A stretch of 63,947 nt of DNA, counting the filler, from Octopus bimaculoides (lineage: Eukaryota): the NCBI RefSeq assembly GCF_001194135.2. It is 5 parts of 5 records of this genome, joined end to end, with 100 filler letters (N's around TTAATTAATTAA, not from the genome) between each part and the next. Parts side by side here need not be neighbours in the genome. Positions count along the whole stretch, not along the records: positions 13,960 to 39,222 come from NC_069002.1; 4 more parts are not named here. One strand, given 5' to 3'. The position numbers and the translations under genes were made by a program. The notes under the pieces were generated by a model. It was not told the DNA's origin. It made no database searches and saw only the letters and a list, made by a program, of their open reading frames with translations. How positions within the stretch are numbered: the stretch's first letter is position 1; every line of letters begins with the position of its first letter. Positions 9,735-39,222 of the stretch are shown here, one piece after another.

Positions 9735-10450
9735 AAGTCGTAGTATTTCTCTGACTACCACTTCTGAGTTTTTCCAGACGTATAGCAGGAAGCCGAATCC
9801 TACTGCAGCACACATGAACCTCCAGCAGCAACTCTCTCTAGTCAGGTTTTGACAACAGTCTCCAGCAGATTCACACAGTCATAGTCATCTTAACTGAGCC
9901 AAAGGGGTTGTTCAAAAATGTGGGCTGGCATGACGTTCCCCACGCGGGAGATACGCCCAAAGGTCATCACACTTGGAACAACACACGAATAATAGGTCAC
10001 ATGCTATTCTGGGATTTGTGCAACTAGTGCTGGCAGAAGTTGTTTTCATTGAGAATACCCAGATCATCTCCAGCCCAGCAAGATGCCTCAACTTGTTCAG
10101 GAGGTTCTTTGCCTTAGTCAAACGGTTCTCCTTGGCCTTGATTGTCCTAATTCTTCCCTTGCATGTCTTGTACGAATGATATCAAGAGTCTTCATTCAGA
10201 GACATCTTTACCCTGGTGATTCCAGCACACATGTCTCTCGCCAAATCCTAAATTCCCTTATCAGATCTTCTATCACCTTGTTCTGAAGTTGTTGGAGGAA
10301 CTCTGCGAACGCAGTTAGAACAAACGGACCGCCTATCGTGTTCTTTCCTGCTGGCCACTTCTTTGTAGACGCTGTTGCAGCGGTCCAGTGTCCGAACATT
10401 GAGCAGCTGTCACGATATCAGCATTTTGTTACGCGGCGCGAAACTTTTTA
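9735..10450 (-). mobile_element. degenerate Tc1/mariner-superfamily transposase, maT (DD37D)-like
   Basis: Minus-strand frames give KEVASRKEHDRRS, EFLQQLQNKVIED, LARDM..KMSLNEDS*YHSYK..KENRLTKAKNLLNKLRH, IWVFS/NENNFCQH*LHKSQN, VMTFGRISRVGNVMPAHIFEQ, LLETVVKT*LERVAAG, VLQ*DSASCYTSGKTQKW*SEKYYDF. The third catalytic motif is missing. Confidence 0.85.
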
Positions 10451-10799
10451 TTCCAATTACCCATCAAAATCCAATATTTTCAGCTTCTGTGTCTTCTCGT
10501 CGACAGCCCTCCTGCCTAATCGCGTACAACAACACTCATCTGCCAATTTACCGATATAATGGACGGTAAATGTAATTAATCACTACCAAAGTTTGAAAAA
10601 AAAACAATGTTTGATAAACATGTCTCTTCTTACTCCCCCCACTGTTTCACGAGTAGCTGAAATGCAGCAGGAGAATCGGCGACCAGGAGATACAGCACCA
10701 AAAAATCATCGAACCATCTCTCACGGCCACTAATCTCTGTAAGCCCACTCTCCTAAATACAAAATATATTGCAGAAAACTCTTGTCAACAATTAATTCT

Positions 10800-11640
10800 T
10801 CATCTATACTAACTTATCCTAGGATAGATTCAGTAGGGGCAAAAGAATCGGAGACCTATTCCTTTATGATACTGGCTTATTTTGCTAAGGCGCCGTATAT
10901 GTGTTCCATGCGGCTCTCAACTATTTTTATTTGTGAATGCATACCACAAAAGTTGAGCTCTTTACCCTCATATGGAATAACAGCGTACTCAATGTCAATA
11001 TATCATCACTAGCTCCTATGACAACTCTATCACTTTTTATAACCGGTTTCTTTTTTAGAAAAAACGAGCCACCAGTGCACAAACTAAGCAACTACTTAGA
11101 AACCTCTGCAGCTACTTAGAAACACTTTCGAATGGATCACGTCCAGTCTGTCTCCTTCAACTATTCAATCATTTAGTGTCTATACCAGTCGAGCATTTGC
11201 CCACTTTTCTAGTATTTGGATAATATATTACTGAAATCCACAAATTCACTACAAATAATAATGATCACAATCATTGCTGATCTCTTATTTAAGGCTGAGG
11301 AAAACTTTCAGCTCGGAAAGTTTATTGACTGTTTATGGAGGAGATATTGGGCACATAAAAGAATACTGCAAATAGGCATGTCTCACTCACAAATATTCAA
11401 CGCTACGTTCCGAAGAAAGCCATTCTACCGACTTGGATAATGTTTACACACATGAAAATCTATTCTACAAGTTTTCTGTCTCCATACTCTACATTTTCTA
11501 CCAGTACTTCAATGGCGTTTACTCTACGGAATTATATAAAGTATCTTCTTATCTAACTATCCGAGCTAATGACTAGTCACCATACCTAATCCTATCACTC
11601 CACACTTTGAACGTTCTGGAAAGAGCTTCCTGAAAACATG
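10800..11640 (-). mobile_element. highly decayed non-LTR reverse transcriptase relic (possibly L1/Tx1 clade)
   Basis: Weak motif echoes only: CPISPP*TVNKLSELKV (compare RPISLLN.DYK), DRLDVIHSKVF (compare FDRVDH) and VIGASDDILTL (compare YADD). Confidence 0.3.
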
Positions 11641-12160
11641 TCTCTTGTTGATGTAAAACAACAGTCATTCAACAGTTACTCAAATTGCTACTAATTATAC
11701 GTTGTATCATTAGTACCAGTATCATTAGTACATGCTAGGAAATAGTCTACCATTGCCAAGGAGATAGCTCTTTCCGCCTGATTTTCCGCCTTTAAAAATA
11801 ATGTGAACGTAATGAATGTAGCAGTTAATGTTAAACTTTTGATGGTGAACAATTGGTGAGGAAGGTAATAAAAGTCATAAAAGTCTTTTTAAACCTTCCT
11901 TTTTCTGGTAAAATATAATATATATATCGTTCACTGAAGGCTTCAGGTTACTTTTTATGTGAAATTACGTTCATTTAGGGTTTGGGGTTGTGAAATAATA
12001 TGAAAACTGAGAAAGGGAGATCAAAGTTACGAGTGGATTAATGGGAGAGACAACGTTTCACAAATGGAAAGAGGAAGTAGATGCAGTCGACCTTAGGGAA
12101 AGCTATCAGTATGTTATGCTATCTAATAGAAAGGATAAACACAAGAAATAGTAAAAGTAG

Positions 12161-30292: not shown

Positions 30293-30335
<43 letters not shown>

Positions 30336-30345
30336 TATTACTATA

Positions 30346-30566
30346 AAGGCGACGAGCTGGCAGAATGGTTATCACGCCGGGCGAAATGCTTAGTGGTATT
30401 TCGTCAGCCGCTACGTTCTAAATTCGAACTCCACCGAGGTCGACTTTGACTTTCGGCCTTTTGGGGGTCGATTAAGTAAGTACCAGTTACCCACTGGAGT
30501 CGATGTAATCGACTTACCCCTCCCCCAAAATAATTTCAGGCCTTGTGCCTACTGTAGAAAGAATTA
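30346..30566 (+). mobile_element. full-length Meta-like tRNA SINE
   Basis: GGCGACGAGCTGGCAGAAT..GAGGTCGACTTTGACTTTC..GGGGTCGATTAAGTAAGTACCAG..GGCCTTGTGCCTACTGTAGAAAG. Confidence 0.9.
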
Positions 30567-31100: not shown

Positions 31101-31117
31101 CGATTTAGGTATAACTA

Positions 31118-31743
31118 TTTTACTCTTTTACTCTTTTACTTGTTTCAGTCATTTGACTGCGGCCATGCTGGAGTACCATCTTTAGCCGAGAAAATCGACC
31201 CCAGGACTTATTCTTCGTAAGCCTAGTTCTTATTCTATCGGTCTCTTTTTGCCGAACCTCTAGGTGACGGGGACGTAAACACACCAGCATCGGTTGTCAA
31301 GCGATGTTGGGGGACAAACACAGACACACAGACACACAAACACACATACATATACATGTATATATNNNNNNNNNNNNNNNNNNNNNNNNNNNNNNNNNNN
31401 NNNNNNNNNNNNNNNNNNNNNNNNNNNNNNNNNNNNNNNNNNNNNNNNNNNNNNNNNNNNNNNNNNNNNNNNNNNNNNNNNNNNNNNNNNNNNNNNNNNN
31501 NNNNNNNNNNNNNNNNNNNNNNNNNNNNNNNNNNNNNNNNNNNNNNNNNNNNNNNNNNNNNNNNNNNNNNNNNNNNNNNNNNNNNNNNNNNNNNNNNNNN
31601 NNNNNNNNNNNNNNNNNNNNNNNNNNNNNNNNNNNNNNNNNNNNNNNNNNNNNNNNNNNNNNNNNNNNNNNNNNNNNNNNNNNNNNNNNNNNNNNNNNNN
31701 NNNNNNNNNNNNNNNNNNNNNNNNNNNNAATCCTGCGCCTATA
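31118..31743 (-). mobile_element. OR/CORE-type SINE interrupted by an assembly gap at its internal microsatellite
   Basis: Tail at 31118-31365; head end TCCTGCGCCT at 31731-31740. Confidence 0.85.
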
Positions 31744-33280: not shown

Positions 33281-33937
33281 TTCCAAATTTTGGCAGAAGT
33301 ACAGAGTTTTTGAGGGTGAGGGATAATGGATTACATCGACGATGTAATACACTAATCCAGTACGTTTTTTTTATCGCTCCCGAAAGGATGAAAGGCAAAG
33401 TCGACTTGCGTGGAATTTGAACTCAGAAGAAAAAACGGACGAAATGCTGCTAAGCAATTTGTTCGGCGTGCTAATAATTATGCCAGCTCGTCGACTTTTT
33501 CTCTTCTAATGTTGATTTCAAATTTTGGCACAAGGCCAGCAGTTTCGAGGAAAGGAATAAGGCGATTACATCGACCCCAGTGGTTAACTGATACTTATTT
33601 TATTGACCCCGAAGGGATGAAAGGCAAAGTAGACCCCGGCGGAATTTGAACTCAAAACGTAAAGATGAACGAAATACCGTTAAGTATTTTGTCCGCCGTG
33701 CAAACCATTCTGCCAGCTCGCCACTCTAAATCTGGAATACACTGGTTTCAGATTTTGGGACAAGACCAGCAATCTCACGGCGTCAGTGATTAACTTGTAC
33801 TTAATTTATCGACCCTCCGAAAGAATGAAAGGCAAAATCGATTTGGGTGGAATTTTAACTCAAAACGCAAAGATGGACGAAACGCCGCAAAGTATTTCGT
33901 CCGTCTTCCTGATTAGTCTGCCAGCTGACCGCCTTAA
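33280..33937 (-). mobile_element. three head-to-tail Meta-like SINEs
   Basis: Three copies of ..GAAAG(G/A)ATGAAAGGCAAA..GGAATTT.AACTC..TGCCAGCT at about 33280-33495, 33510-33725 and 33745-33937. Confidence 0.9.
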
Positions 33938-34299
33938 AAACTTGGAATATATTTACGAGTTGAATGTCTCATCAGGATCACATTGATGGTTGATACCGTT
34001 GGCCACTCATAAGAGCTCAAAGATCTTGCGATTAAGCCGAAGAGGGGAGATTAATGCAGATATTCTGCCTATCTCTAGCATTACTGTTCAAAGCAGGGCA
34101 GGCTTTGCTGCTCACTGTCCTCCACGGACTGAACAGCAGGCAATAGCAATATCGGTCGTTATATTTTGGAGACTGCGGTACATATTAGTCAAACGTGATT
34201 TGGATGCGGAAGAGTTATCGTTTCATCTTGGAATAATGTGAAAAGGTTATGACATTGCGAAGACGTAATTACAGATAAAGATAATGTTTATTCGGATTG

Positions 34300-34740: not shown

Positions 34741-34975
34741 CCAATATATATTCTAATTACTTGTCGAGGTCAGCTTTGCATTTCATCTTTTCCAAAATTG
34801 ATGAAATAAAGTACCTGTAGAAACTTAGGTCCGATCTTATCAATTAATCTCCTCCACCTAAAAACTCTGGCCATGCATCGGAATTTGAATCCACCGCCTC
34901 ATCACCATCCTCATCATGATCACCATCACGATCATGATTACCATGATGGTGATCATCATCATAATCATCACTCGC

Positions 34976-35380
34976 TTTCTCTTTTACTTGTTTCAGTCAT
35001 TTGACTGCGGCCATGCTGGAGCACCGCCTTTAGTCGAGCAAAACGACTCCAGGACATGTTCTTTGGAAGCCTAGTACTTACTCTATCGGTCTCTTTTGCC
35101 GAACCGTTAGGTTACGGGGGACGTAAACACGCCAGCATCGCTTGCCAAACGATGTTGGGGGCACAAACACAGACACACAAACATATACACACACATACAT
35201 ATACATATACATATATACGACGGGCTTCTTTCAGTTTCCGTCTACCAAATCCACTCCCAAGGTTTTGGGCGCCCCGCGGCTATAGTTAAAGACACTTGCC
35301 CAAGGTGCCACGCAGTGGGAATTAACCCGGAACCATGTGATTGGTAAGAAAGCTACTTACCACACAGCCACTCCTGTGCT
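34976..35380 (-). mobile_element. complete OR/CORE-type tRNA SINE (best copy in the window)
   Basis: Reverse complement: GCACAGGAGTGGCTGTGTGGTAAG..GGTTCCGGGTTAATTCCC..GGCACCTTGGGCAAGTGTCTT (CORE-like)..(TA/TG)n..CAGCATGGCCGCAGTCAAATGACTGAAACAAGTAAAAG. Confidence 0.92.
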
Positions 35381-36090: not shown

Positions 36091-36362
36091 TTGTTCAAGT
36101 GAATGTTTAAGAAACCATAAGAAAAATATGTGTTTGCTTTAAAATTTGAGATCACATAGACAGTATTTTACGTAGGATATGGGCAGTTCCCATGAGCACT
36201 ATTTTTTGAACTTCAGCCATTTTGGGGTTTCCTGGAATCTGATCTAGGTAGTAATCAGCCCGTTTCGCTGTCATTCCCAGGGCACCTATGACAATAGGTA
36301 TTGTTTTCGTCTTCAGATTCCACATTTTGCTAATTTCTATTTCAAGATCTTTATATTTACTC

Positions 36363-36364
<2 letters not shown>
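36091..36364 (-). mobile_element. R4/Dong-like retrotransposon 3' fragment (second subfamily)
   Basis: LSKYKDLEIEISKMWNLKTKTIPIVIGALGMTAK..QKIVLMGTAHILRKILSM*. The 5' junction abuts (ATA)n. Confidence 0.9.
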
Positions 36365-36424
<60 letters not shown>

Positions 36425-36666
36425 GTATTTGTAATATAAACACTTATTCATTTACCATTATAACTCTATATCTAAGACTGTGAAGAATTTATTCGTTAGA
36501 ATCCTTGATTAGATTGAACGAAAACTGGTGGAAACGTGTTCCTAATTTTCTCATAGCTTTCGGGCATGAAATATATTCTGCTCAATCAGAATGGTTGGAT
36601 ATGCAGTTTCAGGTGTCACAATAAGAATATAATGGATTAATTAGTCTTATTGATAATCAGACACGC

Positions 36667-36705
<39 letters not shown>

Positions 36706-36862
36706 TGATGATGATGATGATGATGATAATAATGAACTGACACCAAATTGATATGAAAGCATTATTCCACAACGCTGTTGTTCGTTTTGTTGTGAAGTAT
36801 GCTGCCAGTAGAAGTTTGGTAAAATTAGTTCCGCAACACATATGCACACACACACACGCGCG

Positions 36863-36912
<50 letters not shown>

Positions 36913-37039
36913 GACATACATACTGAGCGAGATAGAGAGAAAGAGATGGGGATCTAAATTTTCTGAGGAAGAAGAGAAATTAGACAGTATCTAAATACTT
37001 ACAAACATACATACATACATACATACATACAAACATACA

Positions 37040-37071
<32 letters not shown>

Positions 37072-37373
37072 CATACACGCATGCGCACGTTTATTTTCAA
37101 ATTTATATATATGTCTCTGTGTGTGTGAAGGTAAAATCCAGAGATCAAGGTGTAGGAAGGTAGTCAGCTTCAAGCAATTCGTAGAAGATATGAAATATAG
37201 TGGTTTATCGTATCAAAGTACGATAAGAGGAAAAAAGTTAATTCTATAATTCATGTCTAGCAACAGGGGTTTAGTGAATATGCGAATAGACATCTCAAAT
37301 TTAGGGAATGGAGAAGATAAAATCCAGACAAATTTTGTTTACATATGTATATATATATATAGGAATTTTCAAT

Positions 37374-37445
37374 GGCCGGATAACTGAAGAGATGGCGGCG
37401 TGGGTTCCCACCCCGGCATCCGAAACTCAGAGTTTTATCAGGGCT
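37374..37445 (+). ncRNA. type I hammerhead ribozyme, slightly decayed, with GC-rich long stem II
   Basis: Stem I GATAA/TTATC (extends to GGCCGGATAA/TTATCAGGGC with mismatches). Core CUGAAGA at 37384-90; stem II GATGGCGGCGTGGG-TT-CCCACCCCGGCATCC; GAAA at 37422-25; stem III ACT-CAG-AGT; site GUU at 37432-34. Confidence 0.7.
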
Positions 37446-37626
37446 ATCGAATAAGTGTCACATATTTTTACAGATAAATTTCTCTATTTACATAATATCG
37501 AGGTCACTTTCTTTCTTTTGTTGTCTTTTCAATCAATCAATCAATAAATAAATATATATATATAAAACATGAGTAGAGATGGCTTTCGAGGTGGAGATAA
37601 TTTTTATTTTAATGATAATGTTTATA

Positions 37627-37677
37627 GTTTAGTTCCAAATAAGAATCTGCATTATCATCTATTTCACCAAGGATTTC
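37627..37677 (-). pseudogene. LSM8: LSM8 retrocopy, C-terminal segment
   Basis: EILGEIDDNADSYLELN versus recalled human LSM8 AVIGEIDEETDSALDLG. Confidence 0.75.
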
Positions 37678-37680
37678 TTG

Positions 37681-37906
37681 ATCAACATACATGTTTCCTT
37701 CCTTTTAGTATGCTGCATGCTTGAGCCAGCACTGCTCTTTTATCTGCTGACAAATCAATAAAACAGATGGAAATAATGGTATCAAAAAAAGATTTTCCTC
37801 GAAGCATTCACCATAGCCCTTAACAAATTGAACATTAGTTGTTTTGTTGTCCATAGAGTTTTCAATGGTAGTCTATATTCTGATTACCAACACGAAGTCC
37901 TTGTGA
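37681..37906 (-). pseudogene. AS3MT: processed fragment of an arsenite methyltransferase
   Basis: QGLRVGNQNIDYH*KLYG / TTNVQFVKGYGE / FDTIISICFIDLSADKRAVLAQACSILK versus recalled AS3MT QVEVAEKYLDYHMEKYG-FQASNVTFIHGYIE / [28 protein letters not shown]. Contains a stop and frameshifts. Confidence 0.75.
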
Positions 37907-37946
37907 ACCACAGTTATTGTATACGTTATTCATGTCTTGATGCCCA

Positions 37947-38141
37947 CTTGTCTCCACGGATTATGTATTGTCACTATACAACTTGTTCAACTCCAGAAAT
38001 AGAGCTGAATATTCTTTCATGGCTTTCATCTAAGATTAAGTTAATCGTCTGATCAAAACCTTTCCAAGTACCCACAATCATTTGTCCACCAGCAGTCACT
38101 ATAGACACTGTTTTACTAATATAATTTTCCAGAGCTGAAGC
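37947..38141 (-). pseudogene. LSM8: LSM8 processed pseudogene, codons ~2-66
   Basis: One uninterrupted frame: ASALENYISKTVSIVTAGGQMIVGTWKGFDQTINLILDESHERIFSSISGVEQVV**QYIIRGDK versus human TSALENYINRTVAVITSDGRMIVGTLKGFDQTINLILDESHERVFSSSQGVEQVVLGLYIVRGDN. Start ATG is lost and there are two in-frame stops. Confidence 0.95.
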
Positions 38142-38159
38142 TTTTTAAGATATGGTTTC

Positions 38160-38660
38160 AGAGCGTTTTTTAATAATGACTTCAGACTGCTTTTAGAAAT
38201 GGCTTCATTGGATGACCCAGGTTGTGTGCCTCACCGTCAGACTCTCCACTGCTCTTATCACTGGTACTTTCCAAAGTGAAAACTGATTGTTCTTCCTACG
38301 AAGAATCTCTGCTCCTCTTCTTATACCCTCTTGCATTTCCCTTATTGCTTTGCAACATAATTCCTGTCAATAGCATGCATATAACCTTGTCTTCCTTTCT
38401 CAATTTAATTTTGATTACTCCTTGATTTTGTTTCTTTAAGTGATCTATATTGTTCATACGTTTTTTCGAATCTTGGTAAGCACATGTTCTTTGTCCCTGA
38501 TTGGTATCTTAGCGTTGTCGCAGATCTCATTTATTTCTGAATATAAAATTACTGCTGCTTCCTTCACCGTTCTCTTATTATGTGTGTGATAGAAAGAGCC
38601 GTCGTTATATGTCTCCAATTGATGGGATTTTTTTTCTACCATTAATCATTTCAATCATAT
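38160..38660 (-). mobile_element. N-terminal relic of a DNA transposase, probably hAT-like (hATm-type)
   Basis: KIPSIGDI*RR/FYHTHNKRTVKEAAVILYSEINEICDNAKIPIRDKEHVLTKI/YEQYRSLK resembles the LPS.GDVL..F..H...KRTV.E.A....W.KA.IP N-termini I recall from such transposases. Family assignment is from memory. Confidence 0.5.
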
Positions 38661-39179
38661 ACCTAATAAATCAAATCTGTTTTACACTTCCTATCATTCA
38701 AATAAACATTTAATTAAAAGCGTTTAATTAACACTCTATGGCAATGAAGCGCTGAAATATCTAAACTCGGCAAAAGCTTATAACTATACTGATTACGGAA
38801 TACGTCCAACGGCTTGGAATGAACTTCGGTCTCACACAAGCAGGGAGAGGAGGAGCTCATTCGGCCAACACATGAACTGTGTATGTGTGTGTGTGTTTAT
38901 AAATATATATCTATATGCTTATATATGCAAGCACATATGAGTGTACACACATTTTGTATCTATATCTATTTATACATACATACATATGCTTGTATATATA
39001 TACATATATATGTATGCGAGCGTGTATATACATACATGTGCCTCAATATTTATCTCTCATTGGATGGGGTGCCTTTCTTATTTTCTTCAACTTTCAGGCA
39101 GATTGTTTATATGTCAAGCCCCACAAATTGATGGGGAAAGGGTTAAACATTTCTCAAATTTGCTTTTTGGGCCACCCAA

Positions 39180-39222
<43 letters not shown>

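What the first reader, a model, noticed from the sequence alone, without database searches (positions are those of the whole stretch)
37627..38141. Chimeric retrocopy: AS3MT-like cDNA fragment nested inside an LSM8 processed pseudogene
Seen (minus strand): LSM8 codons ~2-66 in one uninterrupted frame (38141-37947), then ~260 nt that translate as an arsenite methyltransferase segment (DYH*KLYG, NVQFVKGY, DTIISIC.IDLS.DKRAVL), then LSM8 resumes with ILGEIDDNADS (37677-37627). Both genes are in the same orientation. The insert is bracketed by a 7-nt direct repeat, ATCAAGA (37935-41 and 37676-82), but removing it still leaves ~7 non-LSM8 nt, so it is not a clean target-site duplication. Recalled: the break is about where vertebrate LSM8 has its last intron, and the AS3MT segment spans several exons in vertebrates. 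Inference: two unrelated spliced mRNAs were joined either by double template switching during reverse transcription or by a second retro-insertion. A there-and-back switch between two cellular mRNAs is unusual.
Basis: partly seen in the sequence, partly recalled or inferred. Interest (0 to 1): 0.85.

Follow-up and report, generated by a model that had tools for sequence, protein, structure and literature searches.

The report
Pseudogene patch inside LSM8 retrocopy
A dead, intron-less octopus copy of the LSM8 gene carries a 273-base patch copied from another dead gene fragment (AS3MT-like), joined through short matching sequences; it is an ordinary by-product of DNA repair or reverse transcription and has no function.

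Summary
On the minus strand, 38144-37944 and 37670-37627 are a processed LSM8 pseudogene fragment. It is 92-93% identical to Octopus LSM8 exons 1-4, all three introns are absent, the start codon is lost and there are two stop codons. Between these stretches lie 273 nt (37943-37671) that derive from an arsenite methyltransferase (AS3MT).

The interpretation needs correcting in four places.
1. A second copy of the same AS3MT-like stretch lies in Octopus vulgaris (locus L001) with no LSM8 around it. It differs at 6.7% of sites and shares at least two frameshifts with the window copy. The source was therefore already a degenerate pseudogene, not a working AS3MT mRNA.
2. Both ATCAAGA heptamers are inside that source, so they are not a target-site duplication. 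There is no poly(A) either, so a second retro-insertion is rejected.
3. The junctions sit on microhomologies: GTGG, and TTGGTGAAATA against TTGATGAAATA in L001. Six LSM8 bases (CGGTGA) were lost. "ILGEI" is partly AS3MT-derived.
4. Divergence suggests the patch is younger than the retrocopy (p about 0.03-0.07).

The best reading is a microhomology-guided templated insertion into an existing pseudogene. A one-step there-and-back template switch is not excluded. Interest is low.

The parts
38114..38144 (-). LSM8 exon-1-derived sequence. The start codon position 38144-38142 is mutated to AAA and the 5'UTR is absent.
   Evidence: blastn to Octopus LSM8 exon 1, 96-100%
38073..38113 (-). LSM8 exon-2-derived sequence, abutting exon 1 with no intron
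   Evidence: 92.9% identical to exon 2 of L003/L004/L005. Intron 1 (2.4-2.7 kb) is absent
37946..38072 (-). LSM8 exon-3-derived sequence, with in-frame stops TAG TGA at 37976-37971 and a 1-nt deletion near its end
   Evidence: 91-92% identical to exon 3. Intron 2 is absent
37944..37947 (-). Junction 1: the 4-nt microhomology GTGG. It is the last 2 nt of LSM8 exon 3 plus the first 2 nt of exon 4, and it is also present at the start of the shared stretch in L001 (9987-9990).
   Evidence: three-way comparison of the window, the native LSM8 gene and L001
37671..37943 (-). 273-nt AS3MT-like patch that replaces LSM8 mRNA nt 304-309 (CGGTGA). It carries three frameshifts and one stop relative to AS3MT.
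   Evidence: No LSM8 homology. 252/270 identical to O. vulgaris L001. AS3MT similarity
37687..37906 (-). Core of the patch with clear AS3MT coding homology, from (S)QGLRVGNQNIDYH to ILK-GNMY. This corresponds to about residues 110-190 of vertebrate AS3MT.
   Evidence: frameshift-tolerant alignments to frog, ostracod and human AS3MT; HMM hit E=1.3e-6
37935..37941 (-). First ATCAAGA heptamer. It lies inside the donor-derived sequence and is not a target-site duplication.
   Evidence: L001 has ATCAAGA at the same place (9993-9999) without any LSM8 target
37676..37682 (-). Second ATCAAGA heptamer, also inside the donor-derived sequence
   Evidence: L001 has ACCAAGA at 10265-10271
37660..37670 (-). 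Junction 2: the 11-nt microhomology TTGGTGAAATA. It is identical in native LSM8 exon 4 and is TTGATGAAATA in L001 (10277-10287).
   Evidence: L001 continues with AS3MT-like EICTHK-TLW, whereas the window continues with LSM8 GATGAT
37627..37670 (-). LSM8 exon-4-derived fragment (mRNA 310-353). LSM8 homology ends here, 40 nt before the stop codon.
   Evidence: 41/44 identical to exon 4. No further LSM8 homology downstream

Best explanation
I read this as two events. First, a spliced LSM8 mRNA was reverse-transcribed and a fragment (mRNA about 103-353) entered the genome as a dead processed pseudogene. Later, that pseudogene broke next to the former exon 3/4 junction. The break was repaired by copying 273 nt from an unrelated sequence: an older, already frameshifted, intron-less AS3MT pseudogene fragment, of which locus L001 in O. 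vulgaris is a copy. One broken end annealed to the donor at GTGG. Synthesis ran through the donor, and the new strand re-annealed to the other broken end at TTGGTGAAATA. Six bases of LSM8 were lost.

Shown:
- the anatomy of the locus;
- the processed nature of the LSM8 part;
- the existence of an independent AS3MT-like copy that shares frameshifts with the insert;
- the microhomologies and the 6-nt deletion;
- the absence of a target-site duplication and of poly(A).

Inferred:
- the order of the two events;
- that the mechanism was break repair;
- whether the donor molecule was DNA or a transcript/cDNA.

Nothing here is functional.
For: 1. Processed LSM8. The alignment to the spliced mRNA is continuous, and the three introns present in the O. 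bimaculoides, O. sinensis, O. vulgaris and Argonauta genes are absent.

2. Independent donor-type copy. Window 37660-37950 aligns to L001 9984-10287 at 87.9% (E=2e-106), with unrelated flanks and no LSM8.

3. Direction of copying. L001 carries AS3MT-like sequence beyond junction 2: EICTHK-TLW against human EEIRTHKVLW, and there is a weak collinear continuation to HMM positions 209-244 (p about 0.01).

4. The source was already a pseudogene. The same +1 frameshifts, after YGQ(Q/R)NN and at ILK|EGN, occur in identical DNA context in both copies.

5. Junctions. The microhomologies are 4 nt and 11 nt (10/11 in L001). A blunt random join would show 10/11 or better with probability about 8e-6. Six target bases were lost, there is no target-site duplication and there is no poly(A). 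These are the stated hallmarks of class 2 templated insertions (PMC5110952).

6. Age.
- The LSM8 part differs from its parent at 17/243 sites (7.0%). About 15 of these fall on the pseudogene lineage when Argonauta is used as outgroup.
- The insert differs from L001 at 18/270 sites (6.7%), and that figure covers two neutral lineages. It equals the ordinary intron divergence between O. bimaculoides and O. vulgaris (6.8%).
- A likelihood-ratio calculation worked out by hand from these counts, not run as a tool call, gives p about 0.03-0.07 against equal age.
Against: - The dating rests on small counts and on a molecular-clock assumption. The window's species is not known; the gap pattern suggests O. 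bimaculoides, but that is inference only.
- I could not reach the donor copy in the window's own genome, or the orthologous "empty" site in a sister species.
- The LSM8 fragment has no poly(A), no 3'UTR and no clear target-site duplication. It is therefore not a textbook LINE retrocopy and could have arisen in a template-jumping event.
- The break lies almost exactly at the LSM8 exon 3/4 junction. Under a random-break model this is a coincidence of a few percent.
Confidence: 0.5

Rival explanations
1. One-step origin. While copying LSM8 mRNA, a reverse transcriptase jumped at TTGGTGAAATA onto a transcript of the AS3MT-like pseudogene. It copied about 270 nt and jumped back onto the LSM8 mRNA at GTGG, six bases upstream of where it had left. 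The A-B-A cDNA was then integrated.
For: - The orientation is the same, the joins are direct, and there is microhomology at both junctions.
- The LSM8 part itself is atypical: truncated at both ends, with no poly(A) and no clear target-site duplication. That fits a cDNA made by template jumping.
- There is a possible inverted copy of the LSM8 5' end just upstream (16/17 nt; p about 0.05).
- Double template switches by LINE enzymes are documented (PMC2104539).
Against: - The insert-to-L001 divergence (6.7% over two lineages) is about half of what is expected if the insert were as old as the LSM8 part (6-7% on one lineage). By my hand calculation p is about 0.03-0.07 (counts).
- The second template would have to be a transcript of an already dead pseudogene.
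- Described chimeras are serial (A-B or A-B-C), end in a LINE or poly(A) part and are flanked by 10-20 bp repeats. None of these features is seen here.
- A return to the first template within 6 nt is not a described outcome.
Confidence: 0.27
2. Splicing origin. The AS3MT-like stretch behaved as an exon: L001 has ttcag|GTGG at its start and CTG|GTAAGG 24 nt past junction 2. It was spliced between LSM8 exons 3 and 4 in an aberrant or trans-spliced RNA that was then retrocopied. Later deletions of 3 nt and 38 nt, the second between the 11-nt direct repeats, produced the present junctions.
For: - The insert sits at the exon 3/4 junction.
- The shared homology begins right after an AG in L001.
- GTAAGG in L001 falls at the W|G intron position, which is conserved in frog and ostracod AS3MT.
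Against: - No AS3MT-like sequence occurs in any LSM8 intron or flank of three Octopus species.
- In O. vulgaris the two loci are 46 Mb apart.
- The model needs two trans-splicing steps plus two deletions.
- The fragment lacks the other conserved AS3MT introns, and weak homology continues past GTAAGG. L001 therefore looks processed rather than like a genomic exon.
Confidence: 0.05
3. Artefact. The junctions were produced by chimeric reads or misassembly in a gap-rich draft scaffold.
For: The piece has seven N gaps and is clearly a short-read draft. Microhomology-guided chimeras do arise in library preparation.
Against: - Both junctions lie in 3.1 kb of uninterrupted sequence (36091-39222).
- The insert is bracketed precisely by contiguous LSM8 pseudogene sequence with only 6 nt missing.
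- A chimeric read would rarely enter an assembly consensus.
Confidence: 0.05
4. The 273-nt stretch is part of a mobile or dispersed repeat that carries a captured AS3MT fragment, and it transposed into the LSM8 pseudogene.
For: There are at least two dispersed copies (the window and L001). In L001 a loose direct repeat (CTTTTTT..GGGGGA) flanks the region.
Against: - There are no terminal inverted repeats, target-site duplication or poly(A) at the window insert.
- The protein search found only one annotated ORF from such copies.
- The ends of the insert are set by microhomology with LSM8, not by element termini, and L001 continues beyond them.
Confidence: 0.05

Closest known systems
Class 2 templated sequence insertions (patches at double-strand breaks; Onozawa et al. 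2014, reviewed in PMC5110952)
   Same: A stretch of a few hundred bases is copied from a distant locus and inserted without target-site duplication or poly(A), with a microdeletion and microhomology at the junctions. The donor is left intact elsewhere.
   Different: Here both donor and recipient are pseudogenes in an octopus germ line. The 11-nt microhomology is longer than usual. I could not tell whether the donor was RNA or DNA, and no empty site has been seen.
LINE-mediated bipartite or tripartite chimeric retrogenes formed by template switching (Buzdin, Gogvadze et al.; PMC2104539)
   Same: Copies of unrelated transcripts are fused directly in the same orientation, and at least the LSM8 part is cDNA-derived.
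   Different: Known chimeras are serial (A-B or A-B-C), have a LINE or polyadenylated 3' part and a full-length 5' part, and are flanked by 10-20 bp direct repeats. This one is A-B-A, lacks all of those features, and its B part comes from an already degenerate pseudogene.
Ordinary processed pseudogene (retrocopy) of a housekeeping gene
   Same: The LSM8 part is intron-less, 92-93% identical to the parent mRNA and disabled.
   Different: It is truncated at both ends (mRNA about 103-353), has no poly(A) tail or clear target-site duplication, and is interrupted by foreign sequence.

Membership tests
Processed pseudogene of LSM8 | Collinear with the spliced parent mRNA; parental introns absent | tested here: met
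   One continuous alignment crosses the exon 1/2, 2/3 and 3/4 junctions. Introns of 2.4-2.7, 2.2-2.6 and 0.9-2.2 kb in L003-L005 are absent.
Processed pseudogene of LSM8 | Disabling mutations and no intact ORF | tested here: met
   ATG changed to AAA, TAG TGA at 37976-37971, a 1-nt deletion and the 273-nt insert.
Processed pseudogene of LSM8 | 3' poly(A) tract after the parental 3'UTR | tested here: not met
   LSM8 homology stops at mRNA 353, before the stop codon. There is no 3'UTR homology and no A-run.
Processed pseudogene of LSM8 | Flanking target-site duplication | tested here: inconclusive
   No convincing direct repeat brackets 38146-37627. By eye there are only AT-rich near-matches.
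Second (nested) retro-insertion of an AS3MT cDNA | Target-site duplication of recipient sequence at both ends of the insert | tested here: not met
   Both ATCAAGA heptamers are also present in L001, which has no LSM8 target. Six LSM8 bases are deleted rather than duplicated.
Second (nested) retro-insertion of an AS3MT cDNA | Poly(A) at the 3' end of the insert | tested here: not met
   The insert ends in ...GATCAAGAAATCC and joins LSM8 directly.
LINE template-switch chimeric retrogene (PMC2104539) | Parts joined directly in the same transcriptional orientation | tested here: met
LINE template-switch chimeric retrogene (PMC2104539) | The 3' part is a 5'-truncated LINE or polyadenylated RNA, and the 5' part is a full-length cellular RNA | tested here: not met
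   The 3' part is an internal LSM8 fragment with no poly(A), and the 5'UTR of LSM8 is missing. A LINE-tail-like ORF lies 1.2 kb away and is not adjoining.
LINE template-switch chimeric retrogene (PMC2104539) | The whole chimera is flanked by 10-20 bp direct repeats | tested here: inconclusive
   None found with seed 8. The flanks are AT-rich.
Class 2 templated sequence insertion (PMC5110952) | The inserted sequence has a separate donor copy elsewhere in the genome | tested here: met
   L001 on O. vulgaris OX597824.1 differs at 6.7% of sites and has unrelated flanks. It was seen only in a related species, not in the window's own genome.
Class 2 templated sequence insertion (PMC5110952) | No target-site duplication, no poly(A); microdeletion and microhomology at the junctions | tested here: met
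   A 6-nt deletion (CGGTGA) and microhomologies GTGG and TTGGTGAAATA.
Class 2 templated sequence insertion (PMC5110952) | An empty (uninserted) allele or ortholog exists | not testable with these tools
   No tool searches octopus genomes by DNA. Window ORFs are not on record, and the metagenome scan found nothing.
AS3MT/ArsM methyltransferase (origin of the insert) | Significant sequence similarity to AS3MT over the SAM-methyltransferase core | tested here: met
   PDB 8xt7 E=1.8e-7. AS3MT HMM E=1.3e-6 on an uncorrected ORF. The best named relatives are arsenite methyltransferases at 40-47% identity.
AS3MT/ArsM methyltransferase (origin of the insert) | Intact reading frame and a complete domain | tested here: not met
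   Three frameshifts and one stop. Only about residues 110-190 are present, and no other AS3MT part lies within the piece or within 10 kb of L001.

The most novel reading that the evidence does not exclude
The chimera was made in one reverse-transcription run. A retroelement enzyme copying LSM8 mRNA hopped onto a pseudogene transcript and then back to within six bases of where it had left. This A-B-A product is not among the described LINE-mediated chimeras, and it would be the first seen in a cephalopod.
Probability: 0.25. Interest if true: 0.5.

Novelty: new member of a known kind. Interest (0 to 1): 0.2.

Why it matters
It matters little for biology, because both partners are dead sequences. 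It is a clean natural example of a microhomology-guided copy-and-paste patch between two unrelated pseudogenes in a cephalopod germ line. Patches like this can mislead annotation. The O. vulgaris gene model P0121 is an ORF read across the sister copy, and a naive reading would report an AS3MT-LSM8 fusion. If the one-step reading were proved, it would extend the known range of template jumping by retroelement enzymes. A side question is whether octopods have lost a working AS3MT gene, and that deserves a proper check.

Tried and rejected
- Cassette exon from an LSM8 intron: rejected. No homology to the insert occurs anywhere in the LSM8 loci of O. bimaculoides, O. sinensis, O. vulgaris or Argonauta, introns and flanks included.
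- ATCAAGA as a target-site duplication: rejected, because both copies are inside the donor.
- L001 as the native genomic AS3MT exon: I considered this because of ttcag|G and G|GTAAGG at the conserved W|G intron position. I then downgraded it. The other conserved intron positions are intron-less, weak homology continues past GTAAGG, and no other AS3MT exon lies within 10 kb.
- Finding a native cephalopod AS3MT: three word-index protein searches and one exhaustive representative search gave none. The nearest relatives are 40-47% identical and come from vertebrates, an ostracod and protists. Absence is not proven.
- Finding the window's source or an orthologous locus: two window ORFs are not on record, one AS3MT representative was not on record, and the metagenome DNA scan found 0 hits.
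- LSM8 remnants in the flanks: none significant, apart from a borderline inverted 17-mer.
- RNA families and tRNAs in 36091-39222: only microsatellite noise below threshold.
- Pfam on flanking ORFs: nothing.
- Transposon termini around either copy: none convincing.

Full report
**What is there.**
- The piece is gap-rich, 32% G+C draft sequence.
- On the minus strand, 38146-37944 aligns in one block to the spliced O. bimaculoides LSM8 mRNA (positions 100-303, 187/204 identical, E=8e-68). The block crosses the exon 1/2, 2/3 and 3/4 junctions.
- I fetched the parent genes for Argonauta hians (L002) and for O. bimaculoides, O. sinensis and O. vulgaris (L003-L005).
- Their exons lie 0.9-2.7 kb apart. 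The window copy is therefore processed.
- It is dead: ATG is AAA at 38144-38142, and the Leu-Gly codons are TAG TGA at 37976-37971.
- A second block, 37670-37627, matches exon 4 (mRNA 310-353, 41/44 identical).
- LSM8 homology then stops, 40 nt before the stop codon. There is no 3'UTR, no poly(A) and no convincing flanking repeat.
- Identity is 92-93% to Octopus LSM8 and 80% to Argonauta. The copy therefore arose within the Octopus lineage.

**The insert.**
- The 273 nt at 37943-37671 replace six LSM8 bases (mRNA 304-309, CGGTGA).
- Read with three frame corrections and one stop, they match arsenite methyltransferase:
  - human AS3MT structure 8xt7, E=1.8e-7;
  - an AS3MT profile hit on one uncorrected ORF in a six-frame scan, E=1.3e-6;
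  - frameshift-tolerant alignments to frog, ostracod and human AS3MT, running from (S)QGLRVGNQNIDYH to ILK-GNMY.
- Of 150 family representatives, the closest are only 40-47% identical. Those that carry names are arsenite methyltransferases of vertebrates, an ostracod and protists.

**The key new fact: a second copy.**
- The only database protein that matched the AS3MT-like translation is a 103-residue "hypothetical protein" of O. vulgaris, P0121. It is an ORF read across a second DNA copy of the same stretch (L001).
- Window 37660-37950 aligns to L001 9984-10287 at 87.9% (E=2e-106). That is 252 matches, 18 substitutions and 4 indels.
- The flanks are unrelated and L001 contains no LSM8.
- In O. 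vulgaris, L001 and the LSM8 gene lie on the same chromosome and the same strand, 46 Mb apart.

Three consequences follow.
1. Both ATCAAGA heptamers are present in L001 (ATCAAGA at 9993-9999, ACCAAGA at 10265-10271). They belong to the AS3MT-like sequence and are not a target-site duplication.
2. The two copies share the same +1 frameshifts, after YGQ(Q/R)NN and at ILK|EGN, in identical DNA context. They also share a disrupted T-run before FFDTIIS. Their common source was therefore already a pseudogene, not a working AS3MT mRNA.
3. L001 carries more AS3MT-like sequence past the window's 3' junction. EICTHK-TLW aligns with human EEIRTHKVLW, and there is a weak collinear continuation to profile positions 209-244 (2 of 300 shuffles reach it; only marginal with single proteins). 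The window insert is therefore a sub-fragment of an L001-type sequence, not the reverse.

**The junctions.**
- Native LSM8 reads ...GGTGACAAT-GTGG-CGGTGA-TTGGTGAAATA-GATGAT.
- L001 reads ...GCATTCAG-GTGG-ATATCAAGA...AGAAATCC-TTGATGAAATA-TGCACT.
- The window reads ...GGAGACAA-GTGG-GCATCAAGA...AGAAATCC-TTGGTGAAATA-GATGAT.
- Each junction therefore lies on sequence shared by donor and recipient: 4 nt at junction 1, and 11 nt (10/11) at junction 2.
- For a blunt random join, a 10/11 overlap has probability about 8e-6. The joins were guided by annealing.
True LSM8 resumes at 37670.

**Mechanism.**
- A nested retro-insertion is excluded, because there is no target-site duplication and no poly(A).
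- Two models remain:
  - (A) a later, microhomology-guided templated patch at a break in an existing LSM8 pseudogene. The features match those listed for class 2 templated insertions: no target-site duplication, no poly(A), a microdeletion and microhomology (PMC5110952).
  - (B) a there-and-back template switch during a single reverse transcription.
- Dating leans towards (A).
  - The LSM8 part differs from its conserved parent at 17/243 sites. About 15 fall on the pseudogene lineage when Argonauta is the outgroup.
  - The insert and L001, two neutral lineages together, differ at only 18/270 sites.
  - That equals the ordinary intron divergence between O. bimaculoides and O. vulgaris (6.8%).
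  - Equal age would predict about 13%. My hand likelihood-ratio calculation from these counts gives p about 0.03-0.07. This is suggestive, not decisive.
- Model (B) gains some support because the LSM8 fragment is itself atypical, being truncated at both ends. There is also a borderline inverted copy of the LSM8 start region just upstream.
- Model (B) loses support because described LINE chimeras are serial, end in a LINE or poly(A) part and are flanked by direct repeats (PMC2104539). None of this is seen here.
- A splicing model is hinted at by ttcag|G and G|GTAAGG in L001 and by the position of the insert at the exon 3/4 junction. It needs two trans-splicing steps plus two deletions, and no LSM8 intron contains such sequence.

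**Limits.**
- No tool could search octopus genomes by DNA. I could not examine the orthologous site in sister species, the donor in the window's own genome, or the copy number.
- No intact cephalopod AS3MT was found, but the searches were not designed to prove absence.
The independent PDB, profile, frog and ostracod comparisons agree with it.

**Verdict.** It is a pseudogene-in-pseudogene patch of a known kind. Interest is low.

Noticed in passing
L001 10001-10312 (O. vulgaris OX597824.1): The annotated protein CAI9730590.1 (P0121, "hypothetical predicted protein") is an ORF read across a frameshifted AS3MT-like pseudogene fragment. It is almost certainly an annotation artefact.
   Followed up: partly
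window 37671-37943; L001 9984-10420: No intact cephalopod AS3MT turned up in any protein search, and the octopus fragments are only 40-47% identical to any AS3MT. Octopods may have lost a working AS3MT gene. Other molluscs have one (PMC5398495).
   Followed up: partly
window 38191-38207 (minus strand): This is a reverse-complement copy of the LSM8 start region including 7-8 nt of 5'UTR (TTTCAGAAATGGCTTCA, 16/17). It lies 45 nt upstream of the retrocopy start. Weak inverted similarity to the 5'UTR continues down to 38147 (p about 0.05). It may be a 5' inversion, and it remains unexplained.
   Followed up: partly
window 38140-38194: A loose 24-nt tandem repeat (2.2 copies, 74% match) abuts the 5' end of the LSM8 fragment and partly resembles its first 25 nt.
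   Followed up: no
window 36152-36451 (minus strand); related piece at 21281-21366: The ORF ending ...KTIPIVIGALGMTAKRADYYLDQIPGNPKMAEVQKIVLMGTAHILRKILSM looks, from memory only, like the C-terminal tail of an invertebrate LINE ORF2. It has no Pfam hit. It lies 1.2 kb downstream of the LSM8 fragment, next to an (ATA)n run and an assembly gap.
   Followed up: partly
window 34966-35379, 31114-31362, 19974-20349: A SINE-like dispersed repeat of about 400 bp has four copies at 80-87% identity in the unrelated O. vulgaris locus L001.
   Followed up: no
window 23928-24085, 30326-30516, 33366-33938: These are units of a satellite-like repeat with a period of about 220-240 bp. The repeat is tandemly arrayed in L001 at 10540-11970, right next to the AS3MT-like copy.
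   Followed up: no
L001 and L005 (O. vulgaris OX597824.1): The LSM8 gene (40.54 Mb) and the AS3MT-like copy (86.58 Mb) lie on the same chromosome and the same strand, 46 Mb apart. The position of the window locus relative to them is unknown.
   Followed up: no
window 38135 (LSM8 CDS position 9): The retrocopy has A at LSM8 CDS position 9, as does the O. bimaculoides gene. O. sinensis, O. vulgaris and Argonauta have G. The site is a CpG, so this could be parallel mutation. Together with the N-gap pattern it hints that the window is from O. bimaculoides.
   Followed up: partly
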